Below are positions 1,661-53,651 of a DNA stretch of 64,000 bases, in pieces (the stretch's first letter is position 1; each line of letters opens with the position of its first letter). Source of the DNA: Hyphochytrium catenoides (taxonomy: Eukaryota; Protista; Hyphochytriomycota); the NCBI GenBank assembly GCA_900088475.1, contig FLMG01001397.1, forward strand, positions 1-64,000, in the 5' to 3' direction. A program made the position numbers and the translations under genes. The notes beneath the pieces are model-generated. The model was not told the origin of the DNA and searched no databases. It was given only the letters and a program-made list of their open reading frames with translations.

Positions 1661-2328
1661 AGTTATAAGAACTGTCCCGAGAGAGCCATCCTGGCCTCTG
1701 GGGGGCAAGATGAAGCAATTTCTGCTGCAAAGGTCAAACCATACTGTTTCAGATGGTGTCGCCCTCAAGAAAAGACCGTCCCTCCTACGCCCAAACTCTT
1801 GGCCAGTTGGCTCCTCTGAACGCTGAATGAGTATGCAAAGAGTTCATCGACTCTCTGCTTAGGGTGATGCGGCTCTTGCATTCCTTACCAGTCCACACTG
1901 TTACCTCTCAGGTGGCAAAACCCCATGTCATAAGAGAGCAACCTAATAACCAGCTACGCTGCACGGAAGTAAGGGAGTCTTCATTTGCAGATATCTTCTT
2001 CTGGGCGGACTTCCCGTCTTAAGTCTCATGAACGGTGTGAAGGAAACCCCTTCTCGCATTGAACCAATGTACCTTAACAGCCGTGAGAAATGCTCCCACA
2101 TGCGAGCTGTCCTTCAACCTACAACTATCAGAGAACGGAGGTACTAACCTGCCTGAAATGCCTAAGACACGGAGAGCTATCTAAAACTACGTACACAGCT
2201 ACTCATCGACCGCTGCGCCTATCGTTACTGCCAGAGACCCCTTCACAACCAGGATGACCTCCTCATCAAAGCACGCGAGCCAGCACATCTGTCATCGGAT
2301 ATAGCACCATCAACAGAGTGAAGCGGCA

Positions 2329-5300
2329 TTACTTGCAAGAGCGATAGCTCCTCATGAGCGACTGAAAGCGTCTCGCGTTCGGCTTCACTCCAAGCGACGG
2401 TATACCTTCACGCCGGAATACCTTTGCCTTCTCGAGCTCACCAGCCTTGAGGTACGCCTTCAGCAACGCAGAGCAGGTAATCTCACTGGGCTTCACGCCA
2501 GCCTCAGGCATGCAGTTGTACAGGATCTCCTCCGCTGCCTGCAACTGACCCATAGACCCATAGCCTCCCAGGAGCAGAGTGAAGTGCACAGCATCCGGCT
2601 TCACTCCTAGCAGCGGTATGCCCTCACGCAGGAACGCAGATGCCTTTTCCAGCTCTCCAGCCTTGATGTACGCCTTTAGCACTTCAGAGCAGGAGATCTC
2701 ATCAGGCTTCACGCCAGCCTCAGGCATGCGCTTGTACAGGATCTGCTCTGCCGTCTGAAACTGACCCGTAGACCCATAGCCTCCCAGGAGCAGATTAAAG
2801 TGCACAGCATCCGGCTTCACTCCTAGCGACAATATGCCCTCACGCAGAAACGTTGATGCCTTTTCGAGCTCCCCAGCCTTGATATACGCCTTCAGCACCT
2901 CAGCGCAGGTGATCCTACTGGGTTTCATGCCAGCCTCAGGCATACGCTGGTACAAAATTTGCTCCGCTGCGTTCAAGTCACCCATAGAACCATAACCTCC
3001 TAGGAGCAGAGTGAAGTGAATTTCAGTTGGCTTTACTCCTAGCAACGGTAAGCCCTCACGCAGAAACGTTGATGCCTTTGCCAGCTCTCCAGCTCTGATG
3101 TATGCCTTCAGAACCTCTGCGCAGGTGATCTCATTGGGCTTGACGCCAACCTCGGGCATACCCTTGTACAGGATCTGCTCCATCCTCTGAAAGTTACCCA
3201 TAGATCCATAGCATCCTAGGAGCAGAGTGAAGTGGACCTCATTTGGTTTCACTCCTAGCGATGGCATGCCCTCACGCAGAAACATCTCGACCTTCTTGAG
3301 CTCTCCAACGTTGATAGACGCCTTCAGCACCTCAGAGCAGCTGATCTCATCAGGCTTCACGCCAGCCTCAGGCATGCGCTTGTACAGGGTCTGCTCCAGT
3401 GTCTGCAAGTTACCCACAGAACCATAGCCTCCTAGGAGCAGATTGAAGTGAATAGCAGTTGGCTTCAATCCTAGCGATGGCATGCTCTCACTCAGAAACA
3501 TCTCCGCCTTTGCCAGCTCTCCAGCCTTGATGTACGCCTTCAGTACCTCAGAGCAGGTGATCTCACTGGGTTTCACGCCAGCCTCAGGCATGCGCTTGTA
3601 CAACACCTCCTCAAGGGCTCGAAGGTTCCCCTTAGCGCCATACTTATAAATAAGCCCAGTAAGAGTCACAGGGGAACGTAACTGACTCCCATCACTAGCC
3701 GCCTCATTCTCCGTGGGCTGCTTAAATGGCCGGGCGCCTGGTTTCCCAGGTAGCAGTGGAGCTGCTTCATCGAACAGTTTTCGTGCCCTTTCCAGCTCTC
3801 CAGCCCTAATGTACGCCATCAAAACCTTCGAGTAGCTGATTTTGTCAGGTCTCACGCCTGCCTGAGGCATGCGCTTGTGCAGGATCTCCTCCATAGCCTG
3901 CCACTTACCCATAGACCCATAGCCTTCCAGAAGCAGGTTGAAGTGGATGTCACTTGGCTTCACTCCTAGCGACCTTATACTCTCACGTAGGAACGTTGAT
4001 GCCTTTGCCAGCTCACCAGCCTTGATGTCTGCCTTCAGAACCTCAGCGCAGGTGATCTCATCAGGCTTCACGCCCGCCTCAGGCATGCGCTTGTACAGGA
4101 TCTCCTCCATAGCCTGCCACTTACCCGTAGACCCATAGCCTTCCAGGAGCAGGTTAAAGTGCTCTAGTGAAGGCGTCACTCCTAACGAGGAAACTTTCTG
4201 ACAAACAAATACCTTCGCCCTCTCGATTTCTACCGCCTTGATGTACGCCTTCAGTACCTCAGCGCAAGTGATGCTATTGGGCTTCACACCAGCCTCAGCC
4301 ATGCGCTTGTACAGAATCTCCTCCATCGTCTTCCACTCACCCATAGACCCATAGCCTTCCAGGAGCAGGTTGAAGTGCACAACCTCCGGCTTCAGTCCTA
4401 GCGATTGAATCCCTTCTTGCAGAAACCTCCTTGCCATCTCCAGCTTTCCAGCCTTAATGTACGCCTTCAGAACCTTAGAGCAGGAGATCTTATTGGGTTT
4501 CATGCCAGCCTCAGGCATGCGCTGATACAGGATCTCCTCCACTGCCTGCAAGTTACCGGTAGACCCATAGCCACCCAGGACCAGATCGAAGTGCATTAAT
4601 GAAGGCTTCAACCCCAGCGACCGTAGGCCCTCACGCAGAAACATATTTGCCCTTTCCAGCTCACCAGCCTTAATGTAAGCCTTCAGCACCTCAGAACAGC
4701 TGACCGTACTAGGCTTCACGCCAGCCTCAGGCATGCGCTGATACAGGATCTCTTCCATTCTCTTCCACTTTCTTATAGATCCATAGCCTCCCAGGAGCAG
4801 AGTAAAGTGAATATCACTTGGCTTCACTCCTAGCGACTGTATGCCCTCACGCAGAAACGTCTCTGCCTTCTCCAGCTCTCCAGCCTTAATGTACGCCTTT
4901 AGTACCTCAGCGCAGGTGATCTCATCAGGCTTTACGCCAGCCTCAGGCATGCACTTGTACAGGATCTGCTCCATCCTCTGCAAGTTACGTATAGACCCAT
5001 AGCCTCCCAGGAGCAGAGTGAAGTGAATATCAGTTGGCTTCACTCCTAGCAACAGAATGCTCTCACGCAGAAACGTTGATGCCCTTTCAGCTCACCAGCC
5101 TTGATGTACGCCTTTAGTACTTCAGAGCAGGTGACCTCATTAGGCTTCACCCCAGCCTCAGGCATACGCTGGTACAGGATCTGCTCCGCCGTCTGCAACT
5201 GACCCATAGACCCATAGCCTCCCAGGAGCAGGTTGAAGTGAATAGCAGTTGGCTTCAATCCTAAAGACGATGGTCCCTCACGCAGAAACGTTGATGCCCT

Positions 5301-6578
5301 TTCCAGCTCTCCAGCGTTAATGTACGCCTTCAGCATCTCAGAGCAGGTAAACCCATCAGGCTTCACGCCAGCCTCAGGCATGCGATGGTACAGGATCTGC
5401 TCCGCCGTCTGCAACTGACCCATAGTCCCATAGCCTCCCAGGAGCAGATTAAAGTGCACAGCATTCGGCTTCACTCCTAGCGACCGTATGCCCTCACGCA
5501 AAAACATTTCTGCCTTTTCGAGCTCTCCGCCTTGATATACGCCTTTAGTATCACAGAGCAGGTGACTGCATTGGGCTTCACGCCAGCCTCAGGCATACGC
5601 TTGTACAACACCTCCTCAAGGGCCCGAAGGTTCCCCTTAGCGCCATACTTATAAACTAGCTGAGTAAGAGCCGCAGGGGAACGTAACTGACTCCCATCAG
5701 TAGCCGTCTCATTCTCCGTGGGCTGCTTAAATGGCCGGGCGGCTGGTTTCCCAGGTAGCAGTGGAGTTGCTTCATGGAGCAGCTTTTTTGCCTTTTCCAG
5801 CTCTCCAGCCCTAATGTATGCCATCAAGCCTTTGAGCTGATTTTGTTAGGTCTCACGCCAGCCTCAGGCATGCGCTTGTACAAGATCTCCTCCATCGTCT
5901 GCCATTTACCCTTAGACCCATAGCCTCCCAGGACCAGGTTGAAGTGCATTAATAAAGGCTTCATTCCTAGTGATGGCATGTCTTCACGCAGAAACATTTC
6001 TGCCTTTTGGAGCTGTCCAGCCTTGATGTACGCCTTCAGAACCTCAGCGCAGCTGATCGCATTGGGCTTTACGCCAGCCTCAGGCATGCCCTTGTATAAC
6101 ACCTCCTCCAGCGCCCGTAGGTTGTTCTCAGCGCCATACTTAGCAATCAATTGAGTAGGTGCCGAATGTAATTGACTCCTATCAGTAGCCGACTTATTCC
6201 CTGTACGCTGCAGAAGATAAGCAGAAGGCTGGTGTCTACTTTCTCTCTCCTAAGCAGGGTCGAAAGTGTTCGCTGATGGTAAGGTTCTCTCGATGGGCTC
6301 AGCCCTTGGCCTCTTTCTCGCCTTCTAGAGCTACACACCAAGGAGCTCCTGAGCTCATTGTACGCTCTGATGGGGAGGGACCTCCTGAAAGCTTGTGATG
6401 TCAACCTACTACTGCTCGCCTTAGTCCAACTCCCGTAGTAGTACGCTTGGCACCCAGCCATCACACCCAGGCGTGCATTCACATTGGCCCTGGCCATATT
6501 GAGTTTTGCAGGATTGATCTTGGGCACTCTTCCTGAAGAGCTTGACGGTGGGTTACAAAGAGGCCACTCTTTCATCAA
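2329..6578 (-). pseudogene. P-class-like pentatricopeptide repeat (PPR) protein with ~34 alternating 36-aa motifs and an Arg/Ser-rich presequence-like N-terminus; frameshifted in this assembly (pseudogene or sequence errors)
   Basis: ORFs 6147-6578, 5824-6150, 5477-5827, 5046-5507 and 2329-5052 join into one protein. Motif A: EITC(S/A)EVLKAYIKAGELEKAxxFLREGIxSLGVKPx. Motif B: xIHF(N/T)LLLGGYGSxGxxQxxEEILYKRMPEAGVKPx. Both fit the PPR consensus (..Y.K.G....A......M...G..PD). Confidence 0.9.
2350..6140 (-). repeat. Coding tandem repeat, 216-bp unit (two 108-bp PPR motifs)
   Basis: Near-identical blocks such as ggcttcacgccagcctcaggcatgc and agacccatagcctcccaggagcag recur at 216-bp spacing. Confidence 0.95.
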
Positions 6579-6959
6579 TGTTTGCCTCGCTCATCACAAG
6601 GACGAAGGGGAAAAGCCTAGCCTGTCTTTATTGAAGACTTCCACTCATCTGATCCTTTTAACTGACGGCGCTCTGGCGGATGCGTCTGGCCATCGGGCCA
6701 TCAGGCCAGCAACCAGCAAGGACCAGACACCAGACCTGAAGAAGACCTGAAGGTTGATGGATCGGATGATGGGATAGATACACATATTGGATAACAAGTC
6801 AAGTATCAAGTATGTCCTACTTGACCTCTTTCGGGTACTTGCGAGCTATCACGCTGGAGCTCACTGTAGCCGATAAGTAAGTAAAAGTACTGGGTAATGC
6901 TTATAAAGGAATTGAAATTACTTGTGGGCAGAGCAACGCCGGATGTCCGTTAGCCGCTA

Positions 6960-9224: not shown

Positions 9225-12200
9225 CTAGTGCCCCATACTATTGTACATATTGATAACCTCAAACAGTCGCTGGCTCTNNNNNNNNNNNNNNNNNNNNNNN
9301 NNNNNNNNNNNNNTCGTAGCTGCAATGCCATCCATCACCGGCATTTGAATGTCCATGAAGATCAGATCATAGGGAGATGACGCTATCAAAGACTCCTCTA
9401 TAATTGACACGGCTTCGGCTCCATTGGCTGCTACTTCGCAATCCCATCCAGGTTTCTGCAAGATGAGCCTCCGCATCATCTTCTGGTTAATATAATTGTC
9501 ATCTACCACCAGGATTCTGAACTGAGAGCGCCAGCTCTCCTGCGCCTTCGAATCCCTCTGTTCAGAACATGACTCGACGCCCATAGTGTCAATGGTAGCA
9601 CGCTTGGCGGCATTCGATGAGCGTAAAGCTACCCTTTGGTCGTCTGCCGGATGCGCTGACTCCGGCAGAGTTTGCTGAGGGCCAGAACGGACCGCTTCTA
9701 CCATTGAGCGCGCACCAACAGCCTTAGGCCTCGAAGTTTGTTCAGGGTCGAGTTCCCGAGCTGTTGTTGCCCTAGCCTCCGTTGTCGGACTGATGTCTCG
9801 CTCGACCGCCTCTTGCTCAGGAACCCCTCCTAATCTCTTGTGCTCTGCCCCTTCATGGCTTAGGTCTCCCTCCATAGAAAGTGGGGAATCTACTCCTTGT
9901 GGAGAGCGATGAGAGGACTTTTCCGGTTCATCCTCGGCAAACTTCCCGTCAGTTGCTGGCAATTCCTCCGCCAAGAAAGTGAAGCTAAAGGTGGAACCAC
10001 CGCCCCTCTTACTCCTCACCAAGATTTTCCCACCCATGAGCTCTACTAAGCTCTTACAGATGTACAGACCAAGCCCAGAGCCGCCATAGTCTGAAGACCC
10101 GGACGTGCTAAAGCGATTAAAGACTGTCGCCTTCTCCTCGTCAGTCATGCCAGTCCCTGTGTCTTGCACCTCAATCGCAAATACGGCTTTATAATGGTCA
10201 GCAGAGATCTTTCTATCCTCCTTTGCGTCCCTGCCAGCAGTCAAATTTGTTATCTTCTCATCGTCATCAGGGTACCCCGATTGAGCCATCAAGCTTTGGC
10301 CAGAGAAGAGCTTCGTCGTGGGAGAGTTTGTGCACGATAGATCATTAGAAGAGATACCGGTGCCGGAGGAAGAGGAGGAAGCCATTGGTGACGAGAGTCT
10401 CGGAGCTGCTGAGCCGTATTGCTTGGTTTGGGTTGGCGCCAGTCGCTTCACATGGATGGTGATACTACCGTGGGCAGTGTACTTGAGCGCGTTAGACACT
10501 AGATTTATCAGGATTTGGGCCAGACGTGCTGGGTCTCCACGCAACCGGGCCATTTGCAATGGAGTAGCCTCTGATATGACGACACCTTTCTTCTTGGCCT
10601 GAGTCTTGAACATTTTGATAACATCGCGAACCACATGGTGGACTTCGAAGTCCACTAGATCAAGCTTCATTGCTCCGTTCTCGAGCCGTGAAAGGTTAAG
10701 CACATCATCGGCAATGACCTTTTGGTGTCTCACACACTTCTCTATCGCCTCCAAAGATTCTTCATCCAACGCCATCTGCTGCGACACAGCTGGAACCAAT
10801 GGCCGAGGCATTTTATCAAAGATTTCGATCATCCACTTCTTTCTGCTTTCTAGCCCAGCACGGAGTAACTCTACGTTGCCGTAGATACCTCCTAATGGGT
10901 TTCGCAGCTCGTGGCAGAGTGTATCGACGAACTGGCTAAGGTACCTCTTCCTGCTGTCAGCCTCACTGGCTCTCTTTCTCTGAAGCTCCTCTGCCTGTCG
11001 AAGGGCCTTCATTCTTTCGAGCTCCATAGTCTTCATATGAGTCACATCAACGATGGTGTGCACTACGTCGATGCCCTCAACCGTATCGAGAAAGGGTCTA
11101 CTGGAGACCCACTCGCCTACGACCCACCGGATTGAGCCATCAGGCAAGACAAACCGATATTCCCGCTTATCAAGCTTGCCCTCCTCCGTCTTTGCCATTT
11201 TCCATATCTCTAGAATCTGCTCTTGATCTTCAGGGTGAATGGACGAAAGCCAAGCGTCGGAATGCAGCTCAGCCTCTTGTAGTCCGGTAATCTCCACAAA
11301 GCGCGGGTTGAAGAAGAGTTCCGCACCATCTGCAGAGAGCTTAAGAATGCCCACTGGCAGTGTCGCCAGAATGTTTCGATAGTTATCTCGTTCTCGGTGC
11401 AGCGCTTCCTGGGCTCTAGAGGAGAGCAGTTTCAAACAAGCCTGCAGTGCCCTTTCCGTCACCTTCCTCTTCTCTACCTCCAGCTCAAGAGCGCGCGACT
11501 TTTCCTTAAGTGCTTCTATTGCACTTGGATCGGAGGCTGGGCTCACTCGGTCCGTAGAAGGCCAGATTCCAGAATGACAAGCAGCGATGCCTTCCAACAC
11601 GTGGAGATGGTCGGTCGTTGTAAAGCTTCCCATGTGATAAGCACAGAAGACGGCGATATCCTTCTTCTTGATGAAGTCATCCCATAAGACCTCAAGCTTC
11701 AGTGCCTCTGCATGCTCTCCAAGCTGTGCCAGTGTGTTCACCAGCTCTCCAAAGGCGTACATTTTCCTAAACTTTTGTTCGAGCTCCGCTAGCTTTGGGC
11801 CAAAAAGCTCTGTAAATATCTCATCAGTGATGTCAAGAATCCCTCCACATCTTGCCTTCAGAGTCTCGTAAACCTCCGAGGTTTCAAACACCATCAACTG
11901 GCCACTCTGGAGCTTCTTGTCGACGTCAATGTTATGGTCAGCCAGTAGCCGAAGGAATGCTTGCATGTGCTGCTTCGTGACAATGAGAAGCATCGCATCT
12001 TCCGCGTGAAGCAGAGCAGGGAGCATAAAGGAGAGCCCAGCGCGGTAGTAGAGCTCTTCTGAGTCATAAAAGTGCACAAGATGATCGCCCGTGTGATGAT
12101 GATAGGGGAGGACAGTGGTTGATGACGTGGAAGACCACGCTAGGTTGTTGCTGCTCCTCCTAGGAGGTGATTTTCTGCCACCTCGGCCATGCTTTGCCTC

Positions 12201-12620
12201 CTCTTCGCTCAAGGCCGTCTTTGTCATGACTCTATTGTCATCGTCATTACATCTTAGAGGCCCCTCATCAGTCTCTCTCCTCTCATCGGCTGGGGGAGAA
12301 AACTGAGCAGAAGCCATCAAGCTAGTCATCGAAGAGGAGGGGGAAGAGAGCGAGGAGCTCTCTCCTATTCCTCCCTTCTTTAGACCATAGGCAGTGGTGG
12401 TAGATAAAAAGGGATCCCTCTCTCGAGCCCCGTAAGACTGGTTAATGAGTCGTGACCTTGGTGGTACCCTGTCCAAGGACGAGCCATTTACTTTAGGAGA
12501 AGACGAGTACAAGGGTCCAAGCTGCAAAGTAGAAGAAACGTCATTTCTGGCGATGCTTCGATCTCCGCTGCTCTCTTCAAGGGAGTGATTTGCTTCTTCG
12601 GCAGGAGGCGCCGAGGTCAT
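9225..12620 (-). CDS. Hybrid sensor histidine kinase: MEDS-like sensor, PAS, HisKA, HATPase_c, receiver; 3' end obscured by N gap
   Basis: MEDS-like HLVHFYDSEE...FGELVNTL...ALKLEVLWD...VFCAY; PAS (WLSSIHPED, EYRFVLPDGSIRWV); H-box CHELRNPL; N-box QILINLVSNALKYT; G1 VQDTGTGM; G2 GGSGLGLYI; REC ILVVDDN...DLIFMDIQMPVMDG. First ATG at 12620. Confidence 0.93.
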   Translation of the reverse strand: MTSAPPAEEANHSLEESSGDRSIARNDVSSTLQLGPLYSSSPKVNGSSLDRVPPRSRLINQSYGARERDPFLSTTTAYGLKKGGIGESSSLSSPSSSMTSLMASAQFSPPADERRETDEGPLRCNDDDNRVMTKTALSEEEAKHGRGGRKSPPRRSSNNLAWSSTSSTTVLPYHHHTGDHLVHFYDSEELYYRAGLSFMLPALLHAEDAMLLIVTKQHMQAFLRLLADHNIDVDKKLQSGQLMVFETSEVYETLKARCGGILDITDEIFTELFGPKLAELEQKFRKMYAFGELVNTLAQLGEHAEALKLEVLWDDFIKKKDIAVFCAYHMGSFTTTDHLHVLEGIAACHSGIWPSTDRVSPASDPSAIEALKEKSRALELEVEKRKVTERALQACLKLLSSRAQEALHRERDNYRNILATLPVGILKLSADGAELFFNPRFVEITGLQEAELHSDAWLSSIHPEDQEQILEIWKMAKTEEGKLDKREYRFVLPDGSIRWVVGEWVSSRPFLDTVEGIDVVHTIVDVTHMKTMELERMKALRQAEELQRKRASEADSRKRYLSQFVDTLCHELRNPLGGIYGNVELLRAGLESRKKWMIEIFDKMPRPLVPAVSQQMALDEESLEAIEKCVRHQKVIADDVLNLSRLENGAMKLDLVDFEVHHVVRDVIKMFKTQAKKKGVVISEATPLQMARLRGDPARLAQILINLVSNALKYTAHGSITIHVKRLAPTQTKQYGSAAPRLSSPMASSSSSGTGISSNDLSCTNSPTTKLFSGQSLMAQSGYPDDDEKITNLTAGRDAKEDRKISADHYKAVFAIEVQDTGTGMTDEEKATVFNRFSTSGSSDYGGSGLGLYICKSLVELMGGKILVRSKRGGGSTFSFTFLAEELPATDGKFAEDEPEKSSHRSPQGVDSPLSMEGDLSHEGAEHKRLGGVPEQEAVERDISPTTEARATTARELDPEQTSRPKAVGARSMVEAVRSGPQQTLPESAHPADDQRVALRSSNAAKRATIDTMGVESCSEQRDSKAQESWRSQFRILVVDDNYINQKMMRRLILQKPGWDCEVAANGAEAVSIIEESLIASSPYDLIFMDIQMPVMDGIAATXXXXXXXXXXXXXSQRLFEVINMYNSMGH

Positions 12621-13611
12621 CCTCACCCTTCTCCTGAGCCGATGATGATCTTCAACAGATGATCTTCAACAAGCCTGTGGCCGTTCTGGTCTCCTCCTCC
12701 TCCTACTCGTCTTGGCTGCTCTTCTCAGTCATCATCAGACAGAGGCTCACACAGCACTAACTACCCGCAGGCACAATTATTTATATTATCAGAGAGATGA
12801 TGATGGCGACGACCACGGACAGCTTTGAATGGCCTTCTTCCTGCTGCTGCTGCTGGGCTGTCTCTCTGTCTACCTCGTGCGTGCAGCTCCGGGATGCTCT
12901 TCTCTTCAGTCATCATGCTCAGCACGCTGACGAGAGTTGGAGGCGGCGGCAGCTGACTTGCTGGGATCCTTCCCTTCCCTTCCCTTCCCTTCCCTTTGTG
13001 GAGGGAGGTAGCTTGTACAGTCAGACAGAGGAGACCCATGGCAAGGAGGATGGAGGAGTGAGTAATAGGGGAGAGAGATATTACCTGGAAGACCAAAGTG
13101 ACACACATATGGACGCGGTACAAAATCCAGCAAGCGCCACAACAACAACGCACATCGGGAATCTTGATATCCAATGACAGGGAGTAGGGCTCTCAGTATG
13201 CTCAAGTATGTTCGTGCGCGTAGTAAAGTCCAGAACCCGCATTCCGCATTCTCCCTTATTCCGGATTGTATAGTCTATGTGCTTTAGAAGTCTGGATAAC
13301 ATACTCGTCTATTCGGAATTAGACCGGGCGGCCTTGTCGCCGTAAAAGATGCATTGCGTACTGTATCTGCACAGCCCGCTCCATGATGTAGTCGTACCAG
13401 GGGCAGTCTGTCCGTTCTCTCAATAGATGTGTGTACCGTTAGCGGTAAGAATGGACTCAGATCACAAGCCGTCCACTCTTTCTCCCAGTTGCTTCTGATG
13501 TTACTGTAGTAATAGTTTCGTCCAAGTGAGAGTAGGGATATAAGACTGTATTACTACGTCTTTAGGTGCTGTTGGAGTTTTATATCTCTCGCTGATCTGT
13601 ACCTACACTTG

Positions 13612-49711: not shown

Positions 49712-52700
49712 ATGGCCAAAAGCAGGGCCAGCTTGACGTCTGTCACAGACTATTCCTCCATTCGGACACCAGCAAGCTCGTATGCCACCGTCACTCGGCC
49801 TAATCTCGACAGCGTAATGAGCGTGACGCCTTCGCTGGCAAAGGAAATCCCTGCTTCCGCTTGGACCCGGCGCTTCAACACACCAGACCCGTCAGAACGA
49901 GTACATACACCTTCCATGCCACCTGTTGGAGAAAGCATTAAGCTCTTACCTATGGCATATAGGCTGGCAAGGTGAGAATCAGAAGGAAGGGGAGCAAAAA
50001 TCACAGGCTTCTTTATGGAAATAGCAAGGACAACAGAAGCGAGTCTGAGCAAAAAGCCCGAGCCCTAATGGTTCCTTCACTCATATGCCCGCCCTTTGCT
50101 TATCGTGTACAATCTAGCTACATCTATGAAGAGACATCCGCTGGCCGTGCTCCTATATTGGATCTTAAGGTGTGTGAACGACTTCTTGTGCTCAAACTGA
50201 CGGAATCATCTTGCTGAACGGTTCTCCGTGTCAACAGCTTCCCACTCTGCAACCAGAGAAGCCAGGACCTAACGCTGGCGTTCCTCTTGGAGGAATCGGC
50301 GGAGGATCAATTGGCCGCGGCTGGAAAGGAGACTTCAGGAGATGGTCCCTCAGACCAGGTAGGCTCCACTGTCACTGTATAGTTCTTGCTAGCGTTCACC
50401 CATGATCGGATTTAGGATCCTATGAGCACCGGGAGGTTATCGCTGACCAGTTCTCAGTGTACGTGAACCGTGCTGGAAAGGNNNNNNNNNNNNNNNNNNN
50501 NNNNNAGAGAGAGAGAGAGAGAGAGAGGGGTAGAACTATTCTTGACGCAAAACCTTACCTATCTTTGTCGTGACAGGTTCTCTCTCACAGAAGAGATGGC
50601 GGACCCGATGGTGCCTTGTTTTCCTGGGACTGGGGCATGAACACTAGCAATGCCTGTTACCACGCGATGTATCCGAGAGCTTGGACTGTCTATGAGTTTC
50701 CCGAGGCGGCCATCCGATTGGTCTGTCGGCAGATCTCGCCCGTCATCCCTCATAACTATACAGAGTCTTCCATTCCGGCCGCAGTCTTTGTATGGAGTGT
50801 AGAGAATCTGGGAGACGAGGAGATAGACGTTAGTATCATGTTCACCTTTCAGAATGGTACAGGAGGAAAGAACGACTTTGCAGGCAGCCATCAAAATGAG
50901 GTATGTTCTATGCCGTAAGAAGCCAACCGCTTGAAGGTGTAGCCGTGCCCTTTATGACCCACGTTTTGTCTAGGCCTTTGGCTTCGAAGAATCTGCTTTG
51001 GGAGCTTCAGACTGTGCTATGGGTGTGAAGCTCCATCATGTGGAGCGCACCCTAGCGGCAATCCCTCGAGAAGAGATGAAGAAGAGGCATTGCATGTGCT
51101 GCTTCGGATGCTTTGGGATATGCAAATCTTTTCATAAGTCCAATGATGATGACAGGGAGCTTTACATTGATCCGTTGACCTTCTGCATCGCGGCTCCAGC
51201 GGGACAACCTGGCGTCGAAGTCACACATCACGCTTCTTGGAGGACAAACGGCATGCGGGCTGGTCAAGAGGTAACGGGTTCGACTCTTGATACCTGATCT
51301 TCCTGTTCAATGTTTATGCTGCTTATATGGTCCTTTGACGCCACCAGCACGTCGATATATCGTTCTTGACCGTGGTGTCCACTGCTTAGCTTGCTATGTT
51401 GCTCTCTATTCCTTTACTGCTTACCCTCACTTCCACTACTAGATCTAGATTTAGGTCGCTAATCTGTGTGCCTTTGGCCCATGCACCTTACGTAGGTGTG
51501 GAGACATTTTAAGACCAGCGGGCGGCTCGACAACTCCACAAGTCAGCGGGGCCCTAGTAATGTTGGCGAAAGCATCGGCGCCGCCTTAGCTCAGACGTTC
51601 GTAGTTCAGCCCAAAGAACTCAAAAGCAACATTGTCTTTTCCCTTGCGTGGGACATGCCCCTTGCTCGCTTCAGCGAGGGCAAAGCTTACCCACGGCGCT
51701 ATACTAAATTCTTTGGCGATGATGGTAAAGCTGTGGAGGCCATCACAGAGCATGCTTTGAAGTATTGGCGGGTGTGGGAGGAGGCCATAGAGCAGTGGCA
51801 GGAGCCGATTCTCTCGTCTCCTCAGCTGCCTGACTGGTATAAAGGTCAGCTATTTAACGAGCTCTACTTCATCACTGATGGAGGCACAATCTGGACCACA
51901 ATTGGTGGCGCCAATGCCCCGTACGTTGACCATTTTGACGATTCTCCACGGGATTATGGTGATCAACGGCCAAAGCTACCTGCCCCGTCATTGGACCGTG
52001 TGGCGATCGCAGGACAAAGACAATCACACTACCGCGCTAGCTACAACTCTGGGTTCGTTCTGCCTTCGCAAGGGACTTCTCCAAGCTCAGTTCCAGGCCG
52101 TGAGAGTATATCGAGAGACTCAGGTGTCTTTATCTACCAGAGGGAAAACACGAAGCTGCCAAACCCTGATGGTTACCTCTGCAATGATGATCCCATCCAC
52201 TATGAAGACATGGGTTGGAACATTATGCATAGAGATGACTCCATTGGGCACTTTCTATACCTTGAAGGCCACGAGTACCTTATGTACAACACATATGACG
52301 TACACTTTTACGCCTCCTTTGCTCTCATCATGAACTGGCCACAGTTGGAGCTCAGCCTGCAAAGAGACTTTGCGGCGGCAGTTATGACTCACGATGATGA
52401 GATTCGGACGCTTTTCAGCCATGGAGAGATACGGAGGAGAAAAATTGAAGGCCAAGTGCCGCATGATGTTGGCTCTCCAGCTGAAGACCCATGGAATAGG
52501 GTAAGCTTTCATTGCAATAGAAGCACTCAATTTCGCGACCTCTGCATGCCTTGTCTCTGCAAGCCTAACCGAGCCGTCTCTATCCTCTCAGCTGCTCTCT
52601 CTTTTACTCTCTTCTGTTGCACTTTAACTCTCTGACGTTCTCTATCATGCCTCTATGATACTAGGTGAATGCCTATAACTTCCAGGACGTTGGTCACTGG

Positions 52701-53651
52701 AAGGATCTGGGCCCTAAATTTGTCCTACAGATTTACCGGGACTACGTCGCCACTGGCGATGAGAAGTTTCTCCGTGAGATGTATCCAGTTGTTAAGCAAG
52801 TCATCGACCACTGTCAGCAGTTCGACCGTGATGGTGATGGCCTGATAGAGAATGAAGGTTTCCCAGACCAAACATATGATATATGGGTGGTGAACGGACC
52901 ATCATCGTACACAGGCAGTCTCTGGCTCTCAGCGCTAGCTTGCACAGTGATGATGGCGAACATAGTTGGTGACAGTGAGGCGGCTTTGCACTACCGCTCC
53001 CTAGAAACAAGAGGAAAGGACGCTTATGAGAAGCTTTTATGGAACGGCCGGTACTATAACTATGACAGCGGCAATTCAAAGACCAGCACCTCCATCATGT
53101 CAGACCAGCTGGCAGGGCAGTGGTATGCCAGGGCCTGTGGGCTTCCTAGCATAGTGCCTCCAGAACATGCTTCACTAGCTCTAGCCACGGTGTTCGCCAA
53201 CAATGTACTGAGATTTCATAACGGGACCATGGGAGCCGTCAATGGGATGACTGCGGATGGCAAGGTTGACAACTCCTGCCTGCAGTCTCGTGAGGTTTGG
53301 ACAGGCACCACCTACGCGGTTGCTGCAGCGATGATTCAAGAAAGTTTTTTCTCTAGTGGCCGTCCCATCACTCCCGAGGTCAAGGATCTCCGACGTGCGG
53401 GCTTTTCTACGGCTGAGGGCATCTCCCGTTGGGGCTGGCAGCAGGGAGGCTACTGGTTCGCCACTCCCGAGGGATGGGAGGGCTCAGGCAACTATCGCTC
53501 TATGGGATATATGAGGGCCCTTGCCATTTGGTCAATGCAGTGGGCTCTAGACGTTGTTCCTCGGCTGCCCCAGCAACAATCCCATCGTCTCTCAAACGCA
53601 ACCGTCCTTTCCCTAGTAGCTTCCGAAAATGGGCATGCTCCCAAGCACTAG
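49712..53651 (+). CDS. GBA2: Non-lysosomal glucosylceramidase (GH116), about 8 exons
   Basis: [15 protein letters not shown]; [12 protein letters not shown]; [15 protein letters not shown]; FSLAWDMP; LFNELYF; [22 protein letters not shown]; VPHDVG; [11 protein letters not shown]; [20 protein letters not shown]; [12 protein letters not shown]; SREVWTG; [13 protein letters not shown]. Confidence 0.96.

What the first reader, a model, noticed from the sequence alone, without database searches (positions are those of the whole stretch)
2329..6150. TALE-like PPR array: ~34 near-identical 36-aa motifs strictly alternating A/B, with variable RNA-code residues
Seen: every motif is 36 aa (canonical PPR is 35) and two scaffolds alternate without exception, giving a highly homogeneous 216-bp DNA unit. 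The helix cores are nearly fixed, while position 5 and the last residue vary: A motifs have S/A at 5, B motifs have N/T (one D) at 5, and the last residue is mostly D/N/S/T. Module 3 pairs: TS, ST, ND, SN, TN, AT, TS, AD, ND, SD, TS, SN. Module 2 pairs: TN, SN, ND, ST, NN, ST, TD, AS, TS, SS, DN, SE, NN, AS, ND, AS, ND, SG. Established: these two positions form the PPR code (TN/SN=A, TD/SD=G, ND=U, NN=C/U), and natural PPR motifs are usually highly degenerate. Inference: a recently expanded, recombination-shuffled RNA reader in which every second base is purine-biased and the other is switchable. It would be analogous to plant restorer-of-fertility-like PPRs and might survey mitochondrial or selfish RNAs. 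It would also be a natural dimeric scaffold for programmable RNA binding.
Basis: partly seen in the sequence, partly recalled or inferred. Interest (0 to 1): 0.8.

Follow-up and report, generated by a model that had tools for sequence, protein, structure and literature searches.

The report
Two-motif PPR array, probably broken copy
This is a real gene of the PPR family of RNA-binding proteins, built from 34 repeats of 36 residues in which two repeat types alternate strictly; it belongs to a family found only in this organism's genome, and this copy carries four frame breaks, so it is probably dead or misassembled.

Summary
On the minus strand (ATG 6497, stop 2329) lie 34 PPR motifs, each 36 residues, with types A and B alternating without exception. 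They form three modules of 4, 18 and 12 motifs joined by 21-residue linkers.

Three things need correcting. The repeats are not near-identical: DNA identity is 76-81%. Several non-code positions vary as much as the code positions. Four 1-nt deletions break the frame in the 5' third, so this copy is probably a pseudogene or misassembled.

The family is real. The genome holds at least 135 units of 72 residues on about 16 contigs, and at least nine loci have intact genes with a basic N-terminal presequence. AlphaFold gives a confident PPR solenoid (pLDDT 89). Alignment to designer PPRs fixes the register of positions 5 and 36.

New here: B motifs carry canonical code pairs (ND, TN, TD, NN, NS) in 87% of cases, A motifs in only 16% (mostly ST or SS). 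Alternate bases would be read specifically, and the bases between weakly, with a bias to A or purines.

No relative above 36% identity exists in 1.84 billion representative proteins. No mitochondrial target could be assigned. The scan found this family before on two other pieces.

The parts
6231..6497 (-). Start codon (6497-6495) and N-terminal presequence. It is basic and rich in S, T, R and A, has no acidic residue in about the first 45 residues, and lacks a hydrophobic signal peptide.
   Evidence: ORF 6147-6578. About 88% DNA identity to the N-terminus of the intact paralogue on C1873. The same presequence heads the intact ORFs on C2965, C4408, C183, C420, C1149 and C4325. Mitochondrial targeting is inferred from composition only.
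6230..6231 (-). Frame break 1: a 1-nt deletion relative to the paralogue, between the presequence and module 1.
   Evidence: Pairwise alignment with C1873; frame change seen in the three-frame translation.
5741..6168 (-). Module 1, four motifs: N-cap B' (6168-6061), A (6060-5953), B (5952-5845) and C-cap A' (5844-5741). A' carries frame break 2 (1-nt deletion at 5826/5827, creating TGA 5826-5824) and a 3-nt deletion at 5837/5838.
5678..5740 (-). 21-residue linker between modules 1 and 2 (ARPFKQPTENETATDGSQLRS).
   Evidence: Translation. The equivalent linker before module 3 is predicted disordered.
3736..5677 (-). Module 2, 18 motifs: B', eight A-B pairs, A'. Pairs at positions 5 and 36 are TN SN ND ST NN ST TD AS TS SS DN SE NN AS ND AS ND SG. 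It carries frame break 3 (5528/5529) and frame break 4 (5087/5088).
3673..3735 (-). 21-residue linker between modules 2 and 3 (ARPFKQPTENEAASDGSQLRS).
   Evidence: AlphaFold pLDDT is below 50 for residues 1-33 of the module-3 query.
2377..3672 (-). Module 3, 12 motifs, in frame. Pairs are TS ST ND SN TN AT TS AD ND SD TS SN. Read with the published code this gives 5'-A A U A A R A G U G A A-3'.
   Evidence: AlphaFold2 mean pLDDT 89, with 25 helices in a 13-3-14-6 pattern. Foldseek top hit is 5i9f, dPPR-U10 with RNA, E 2.3e-15. phmmer against 6een gives 3.5e-79.
2329..2376 (-). C-terminal tail ARRFQSLMRSYRSCK (a degenerate start of a B motif) and the stop codon 2331-2329. This is the conserved end of the gene in the family.
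   Evidence: Intact paralogues end the same way...ARRVRSIMERYRSSK*...AKHLQLFKESDHSRN*.
2329..5052 (-). Longest open frame left in this copy (907 codons). It starts inside a B motif and has no presequence of its own.

Best explanation
The locus is one member of a PPR gene family known so far only from this genome. The genome is probably Hyphochytrium catenoides. Family genes have a single exon and this plan: ATG, then a basic presequence of about 110-130 residues, then one to three solenoid modules, then a 15-residue tail. The presequence is inferred to direct the protein to mitochondria. Each module has an N-cap motif B', then (A-B)n, then a C-cap motif A'. Modules are joined by disordered linkers of 21 residues.

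Every motif is a 36-residue helix-turn-helix. Stacked together they form the PPR superhelix, which in characterised PPRs binds single-stranded RNA at one nucleotide per motif. The base is read by residue 5 and the last residue.

In this family B motifs carry the canonical four-letter code: ND for U, TN for A, TD for G, and NN or NS for C. A motifs carry mostly ST, SS, AT or SC, which published assays link weakly to A or purines. The predicted ligand is therefore an RNA in which every second base is read specifically and the bases between are read loosely.

The family evolves by tandem duplication, exchange between paralogues, and toggling of code residues under overall purifying selection.

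The window copy has four 1-nt deletions between its presequence and its 907-codon ORF. As assembled it cannot make a targeted full-length protein, and it is most likely a young pseudogene.

Shown: the anatomy, the fold class, the register of the code residues, the family and the frame breaks. Inferred: RNA binding, mitochondrial location, and the meaning of the A and B pairs.
For: Pfam PPR_3 5.6e-75 and PPR_2 3.5e-71. Spacing of 108 nt and A/B alternation. AlphaFold2 pLDDT 89 and pTM 0.76, a regular helical hairpin solenoid. Best structural matches are designer PPRs bound to RNA and PPR10.

phmmer against dPPR10 (6een) gives 3.5e-79. Position 5 aligns with the N or T of the designer motif and the last residue with its D. 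One inserted residue sits at different places in helix b of A and of B.

Family: 64 matches to module 3 and at least 135 matches to the 72-residue profile in the own genome. Intact ORFs of 440-1272 codons carry the presequence and the same C-terminal tail.

Code pairs: 90 of 103 B motifs carry canonical pairs, against 16 of 100 A motifs. B position 5 is N in 52 and T in 50 motifs and nothing else but one D. The meaning of the pairs is taken from PMC6468296.

Selection: overall pN/pS is 0.45-0.5. The last residue reaches 1.0-1.7 in the window and up to 2.5 on C2965.

Frame breaks. No indel was seen between the window and contigs of two DNA runs.

Organelles: no psbA in the genome and a 48-kb mitochondrial contig, so mitochondria are the only organelle with a genome detected in the assembly.
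Against: No RNA data: no RNA run holds the locus, so expression is unknown for the whole family.

The code was established on 35-residue plant and designer motifs. Whether 36-residue motifs keep one nucleotide per motif is untested. Long (L) motifs of moss PLS proteins contribute little to recognition (PMC7190159, abstract seen).

The code-based scan of the mitochondrial genome gave nothing beyond permuted arrays.

The four frame breaks are all 1-nt deletions clustered in the 5' 1.4 kb, with no in-register stop anywhere. That pattern also fits assembly error in a short-read assembly of a heterozygous diploid (PMC5795050). I could not confirm that each site is bridged by a read-derived contig.

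Mitochondrial targeting rests on composition only.
Confidence: 0.6

Rival explanations
1. The gene is intact and functional in the organism. The four 1-nt deletions would be errors or haplotype chimeras of an Illumina-only de Bruijn assembly across 216-bp repeats that are longer than the reads.
For: All four breaks are single-base deletions and all lie in the 5' 1.41 kb of a 4.17-kb gene (p about 0.013 if evenly spread). There is no in-register stop, and the motifs between the breaks match the consensus well. Many family members sit at contig ends or contain N gaps, which shows the assembler struggled with them. The assembly matches a Platanus assembly of a diploid with 2.75% SNPs.
Against: Laying contigs of two DNA runs (about 200x and 14x unique depth) on 1800-6800 showed no inserted or deleted letters. 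At least nine other loci assemble with uninterrupted ORFs of up to 1272 codons, so the assembler does not generally introduce indels here. Other clearly decayed fragments of the family exist with stops (C1676, C156, C420:2248-2623).
Confidence: 0.3
2. The arrays are helical-repeat scaffolds that do not read RNA base by base. They could be protein-binding or mitoribosome-associated PPR/TPR-like proteins. The variation at positions 5 and 36 would then be ordinary surface drift.
For: Several positions outside the code vary as much as, or more than, positions 5 and 36. A motifs mostly carry pairs with weak or no assigned specificity. Many PPR hits in the PDB are mitoribosomal proteins. No target was found.
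Against: B motifs use only N or T at position 5 (102 of 103) and D, N or S at the last position (97 of 103). These are exactly the residues of the validated code, and all four letters are used at similar frequency. Drift would not keep that alphabet. The closest solved relatives by sequence are RNA-bound designer PPRs.
Confidence: 0.1

Closest known systems
Designer/consensus PPR proteins (dPPR10 6een, dPPR-U10 5i9f, cPPR)
   Same: Arrays of similar PPR motifs on one scaffold, with specificity set by residue 5 and the last residue. Best sequence match is 3.5e-79 and best structural match 2.3e-15 at 28-29% identity. B motifs use the same ND, TN, TD and NS/NN pairs.
   Different: Those proteins are synthetic, with one 35-residue motif type. 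This family is natural, has 36-residue motifs of two strictly alternating types, and joins several capped modules by linkers. Its repeats are only 65-86% identical.
Plant restorer-of-fertility-like (RFL) P-class PPR proteins
   Same: Arrays with no catalytic domain. Tandem gene clusters (three genes on C2965). Mosaic similarity between paralogues. Raised non-synonymous change at base-reading positions. Live and dead copies side by side (RFL features from PMC5075784).
   Different: This family is not in the plant RFL clade: plant PPRs are 21-27% identical. RFL proteins have 35-residue motifs of one type and a known link to cytoplasmic male sterility. Here position 5 is only moderately variable, and no conflict partner is known.
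PLS-class PPR proteins of land plants
   Same: A regular alternation of distinct motif types, including motifs of 35-36 residues. One motif type (L) contributes little to base recognition (PMC7190159).
   Different: PLS proteins have triplets P-L-S with 31-residue S motifs and C-terminal E/DYW editing domains. Here the unit is a doublet of 36 + 36 residues, with no S motif and no extra domain.
TAL effector repeats
   Same: Analogy only: tandem repeats in which a residue pair sets the base that is read.
   Different: TAL effectors are an unrelated fold that binds DNA. Their repeats are nearly identical outside the two variable residues. Here at least 10 columns per motif vary.
Divergent 36+36 PPR proteins of the same genome (C58, C2157, C2495, C1539)
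   Same: The same 72-residue A/B register, with the signatures 'AE.FL...M' and 'E.IL..RMP.AG..P'. Identity to the window array is 28-45%.
   Different: Their repeats are degenerate, as in ordinary PPR proteins, and they are single-module. They look like the old stock from which the homogenised family expanded. This is inference.

Membership tests
PPR superfamily (Pfam PF01535 / PF13041 / PF13812) | Profile match above the curated cut-off | tested here: met
   PPR_3 247.8 bits (cut-off 25), PPR_2 235.6 (30), PPR 129.3 (25) for the 907-residue ORF. The three upstream ORF pieces also match.
PPR superfamily | Helix-turn-helix motifs stacked into a superhelix like solved PPR proteins | tested here: met
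   AlphaFold2 pLDDT 89, with 25 regular helices. The Foldseek top 13 hits are all PPR proteins.
PPR superfamily | 35-residue motif | tested here: not met
   All 34 motifs have 36 residues. Each has one inserted residue in helix b relative to dPPR motifs. Lengths of 31-36 residues occur in accepted PPR classes, so this does not exclude membership.
PPR superfamily | Sequence-specific binding of single-stranded RNA, one nucleotide per motif | not testable with these tools
   There is only indirect support: the code residues align with those of RNA-bound designer PPRs, and B motifs keep the canonical alphabet.
P-class PPR | Arrays of one motif type without C-terminal E/DYW or other domains | tested here: inconclusive
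   No extra domain was found. However, two motif types alternate strictly.
PLS-class PPR | P-L-S triplets and C-terminal E/E+/DYW domains | tested here: not met
   The period is 72 residues, not a triplet. There is no 31-residue S motif and no DYW or E domain hit.
Restorer-of-fertility-like (RFL) PPR | Membership of the plant RFL clade | tested here: not met
   The best plant hits are 21-27% identical. The best hit of any kind is 33-36% identical.
Restorer-of-fertility-like (RFL) PPR | Diversifying change concentrated at base-reading residues; clustered, recombining paralogues | tested here: inconclusive
   The last residue has pN/pS of 1.0-2.5 relative to mean pS, but position 5 has only 0.7-0.8, and other columns are as high. 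There is a tandem cluster on C2965, and nearest-neighbour motifs form a mosaic across loci.
TAL-effector-like repeat logic | Repeats nearly invariant except for the specificity residues | tested here: not met
   Mean DNA identity among the window motifs is 0.76-0.81. Entropy exceeds 1 bit at 12 or more columns of each motif type.

The most novel reading that the evidence does not exclude
The family would be a natural programmable RNA reader with a two-motif grammar, seen so far only in this one genome. B motifs would spell any of the four bases with the canonical PPR code. A motifs would act as A/purine-biased or spacer positions. The genes would evolve by birth and death, exchange between paralogues and toggling of code residues, tracking changing mitochondrial or selfish RNAs. 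That would be a counterpart, outside plants, of the restorer-of-fertility-like PPRs. It would also be a ready-made 36+36 scaffold for engineering.
Probability: 0.2. Interest if true: 0.75.

Novelty: new variant of a known kind. Interest (0 to 1): 0.5.

Why it matters
Natural PPR proteins are usually degenerate, which makes their targets hard to predict. Engineering therefore relies on synthetic consensus motifs.

This family shows what evolution does with a semi-homogeneous PPR scaffold. It has a strict doublet of two 36-residue motifs, capped modules strung on linkers, and one motif type that keeps the full canonical four-letter code while the other does not.

If the B motifs read bases as their residues predict, the family offers a natural test of whether alternate-position reading works. 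It also offers a second, independent case of rapid retargeting of PPR proteins outside land plants.

For annotation of this genome it matters that the family is fragmented and partly broken in the short-read assembly. This particular copy should not be called as a normal gene without resequencing.

Tried and rejected
(1) Target prediction. I turned the position-5/last pairs of 15 arrays into scoring matrices, using my own approximate weights based on PMC6468296. I scanned both strands of the 48,127-bp mitochondrial contig. The best scores equalled those of the same motifs in permuted order. The single nominal p of 0.023, for module 3, does not survive 15 tests. The patterns carry only 5-16 bits against a search space of about 16.5 bits. 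This is no support and also no evidence against a mitochondrial target.

(2) Relatives elsewhere. The word-based search gave only 21-27% identical PPRs, mostly from plants. The exhaustive representative search gave a best identity of 33-36%. None of 274 fetched hits has the A/B signature. A search with the divergent C58 paralogue gave 20-27%. The metagenome pattern scan confirmed no relative. The ESM Atlas gave generic PPR clusters. A few environmental proteins have a weak 36- or 72-residue period. One of them, P0122, aligns at 21-23% to the divergent paralogues; I could not tell whether this is homology or convergence.

(3) Expression. No RNA run holds the locus.

(4) Frame breaks. One reads call showed no indel, but it lists only the longest contigs, so bridging of each site is unproven.

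(5) Introns. The possible acceptor at about 6208 was rejected, because intact paralogues read straight through the equivalent place.

(6) Plastid targeting was rejected: there is no signal peptide and no psbA in the assembly.

(7) Literature. Four searches found no description of a 36+36 alternating PPR family, or of PPR arrays in hyphochytrids or oomycetes. The Hyphochytrium genome paper does not mention PPR.
Full report
**What is there.** On the minus strand of window 2329-6497 lies a single-exon gene made almost wholly of pentatricopeptide (PPR) motifs. Tandem Repeats Finder reports a 216-bp period at 78-80% matches. Pfam scores the 907-residue ORF at 5.6e-75 for PPR_3 and 3.5e-71 for PPR_2, and the three shorter upstream ORFs also match PPR models. 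Anchoring on the G-x-K-P loop shows a spacing of exactly 108 nt from 6075 to 2391, apart from the two linkers and three steps of 107 nt.

Two motif types alternate without exception.
- A consensus: EITCAEVLKAYIKAGELEKASTFLREGIPSLGVKPS.
- B consensus: AIHFNLLLGGYGSMGQLQTMEQILYKRMPEAGVKPD.

The gene divides into three modules of 4, 18 and 12 motifs, 34 in all. Each module opens with a variant B motif (..L.YKYGAKGNLRALEEVLYKRMPEAG) and closes with a variant A motif (KISYSKVLMAYIRAGELERARKLFDEAAPLLPGKP). Linkers of 21 residues (ARPFKQPTENE.A.DGSQLRS) join the modules.

Intact paralogues show the full gene plan. It is ATG, a basic presequence of about 110-130 residues rich in S, T and R, the arrays, and a short tail ending ...YRS.K*. 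The window copy has that presequence from ATG 6497 (MARANVNARLGVMAGCQAYYYGSWTKASSSRLTSQAFRRSL...) and the conserved stop at 2329.

Four single-base deletions shift the frame between them, at 6230/6231, 5826/5827, 5528/5529 and 5087/5088. As assembled, the presequence is cut off from the arrays. The only long frame, 2329-5052, starts inside a B motif.

Contigs built from two DNA runs of the same study show no inserted or deleted letters against 1800-6800. I could not verify that each break is bridged.

All four breaks are deletions and all lie in the 5' third. No in-register stop exists anywhere. A young pseudogene is my preferred reading, but a local assembly error or a chimera of a dead and a live copy remains a serious rival.

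**Which genome.** The genome has 4759 contigs, and the last one is a 48-kb mitochondrial genome. DNA runs date from 2011 and 2017. This matches the Illumina-only Platanus assembly of Hyphochytrium catenoides, which has 4758 scaffolds plus the mitochondrion and is a diploid with a SNP frequency of about 0.0275 (PMC5795050). The identification is my inference from these statistics.

**How homogeneous the array is.** It is less homogeneous than claimed. Mean DNA identity among the window's A motifs is 0.757 and among its B motifs 0.812. That equals the level between loci (0.773 and 0.81). Other loci are more homogeneous internally, at 0.83-0.91. Most window motifs have their nearest neighbour in another locus (C4263, C1873, C1238, C4325). 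That mosaic fits exchange between paralogues, or chimeric assembly. Synonymous divergence among the repeats is 0.30-0.41 and overall pN/pS is 0.45-0.5. The repeats are therefore neither recent nor free of constraint.

**Whether the code positions are special.** Partly.
- The last residue (position 36) is the first or second most variable column of A motifs and the fifth or sixth of B motifs. Its non-synonymous diversity is at or above the mean synonymous level: 1.2-1.7 in the window and up to 2.5 on C2965.
- Position 5 is intermediate, at 0.7-0.8.
- Positions 1, 2, 14, 16 and 19 of B and 21, 22, 27-29 of A are as variable.

So the TALE-like picture fails. What is striking is the alphabet.
- Position 5 of 103 B motifs is N in 52, T in 50 and D in 1.
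- Their last residue is D in 50, N in 37 and S in 10.
- 87% of B motifs carry one of the seven canonical pairs: ND 31, TN 21, TD 19, NN 15, NS 4. All four bases are represented at similar frequency.
- Only 16% of 100 A motifs do so. They carry ST 28, SS 12, SN 9, SD 6, and AT, LT, AC, SC or CT.

Published gel-shift work assigns TN and SN to A, TD and SD to G, ND to U, and NN, NS and NT to C. It finds weak association of SS and ST with A. It also finds that A, C or G at position 5 favours purines (PMC6468296).

**Fold and register.** AlphaFold2 on module 3, with 13 paralogous rows as its alignment, gives mean pLDDT 89 and pTM 0.76. The model has 25 helices in a strict 13-3-14-6 pattern, and the linker is disordered. 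Foldseek ranks designer PPRs bound to RNA or ssDNA first, then PPR10 (5i9f, E 2.3e-15). phmmer against the PDB gives 3.5e-79 to dPPR10. In the alignment my position 5 falls on the designer motif's position 5 and the last residue on its position 35. The extra residue lies early in helix b of B motifs and late in helix b of A motifs. The two motif types are thus two different one-residue expansions of the 35-residue motif.

**Family and distribution.**
- Module 3 finds 64 matches in the own genome.
- A 72-residue profile finds at least 135 units on about 16 contigs.
- At least nine loci have the presequence and array in one open frame. C2965 has a tandem cluster with ORFs of up to 1272 codons.
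- Decayed fragments with stops exist on C1676, C156 and C420.
- More distant proteins on C58, C2157, C2495 and C1539 keep the same 36+36 register with degenerate repeats. They are probably the older stock.

Outside this genome nothing close was found. Among 1.84 billion representative proteins the best hit is 33-36% identical, and none of 274 fetched hits has the A/B signature. The metagenome scan was blank.

Homogeneous PPR arrays as such are not unique. Examples among the hits are environmental TIR-domain proteins with PPR arrays (P0110, P0188). Others are a two-motif array of about 76 residues in the gammaproteobacterium Parashewanella curva (P0121) and an environmental protein with a 72-residue doublet of other motif types (P0148).

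The scan has met this family twice before on other pieces of the genome. Those notes agree with my reading.

**Location and target.** The assembly has no psbA, and the presequence has no signal peptide. Mitochondria are therefore the likely destination; this is inference. A code-based scan of the mitochondrial contig (69% AT) was uninformative, because permuted arrays score as well.

**Verdict.** The repeat architecture is real and is a new variant of the PPR kind: a strict doublet of two 36-residue motifs, capped modules on linkers, and canonical code pairs confined to one motif type. The family is expanded in this genome and was found nowhere else. The window copy is probably broken. RNA binding, targets and expression are untested.

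Noticed in passing
G000:C2965 (L013:2807-6622, L013:8618-10000 continuing into L014:1-2750): A tandem cluster of family genes on one 18.7-kb contig. Each gene has its own presequence. One ORF is 1272 codons long with three modules, and N gaps lie inside the arrays. The linkers there differ from those in the window and contain a degenerate A' motif.
   Followed up: partly
window 3673-3735 and 5678-5740 versus 2332-2376 and 6169-6230: The inter-module linker looks like the gene's C-terminal tail (G.KP.AR.F.Q) fused to the segment that follows the presequence (TENETATDGSQ...LI.KYGA). Multi-module genes may therefore have arisen by in-frame fusion of tandem gene copies. The similarity is short.
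   Followed up: no
window 9225-12626 (-): A hybrid histidine kinase with MEDS, PAS, HisKA, HATPase_c and receiver domains in one 1133-codon ORF. An N run at 9278-9313 lies inside it.
   Followed up: no
window 51496-52635 and 52665-53651 (+): A glycosyl-hydrolase family 116 (beta-glucosidase 2-like) gene split into two adjacent ORFs. The cause could be a short intron or a frame break.
   Followed up: no
G000:C4759 (48,127 bp) and G000:C1785 (11,558 bp): C4759 is the mitochondrial genome (cox1 found, 69% AT). C1785 is a 100% identical duplicate of C4759:33441-44998. Reading TGA as a sense codon about doubles the number of ORFs over 100 codons; I did not resolve which genetic code is used.
   Followed up: partly
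P0121 (Parashewanella curva, RLV58935.1); P0110 and P0188 (environmental): Bacterial or environmental proteins with very homogeneous PPR-like arrays. One has a two-motif unit of about 76 residues repeated about 13 times. Two have an N-terminal part resembling a TIR domain followed by an NTPase (judged from the sequence by eye, not scanned against Pfam), then 32-residue PPR-like repeats.
   Followed up: no
window 5651-6162, run X1: One read-derived contig joins 5651 to 6162. It skips 510 bases and has 25 other letters between the two sides; these letters match the C1873 paralogue. It is an allele or paralogue that lacks module 1, or an assembly-graph artefact.
   Followed up: no
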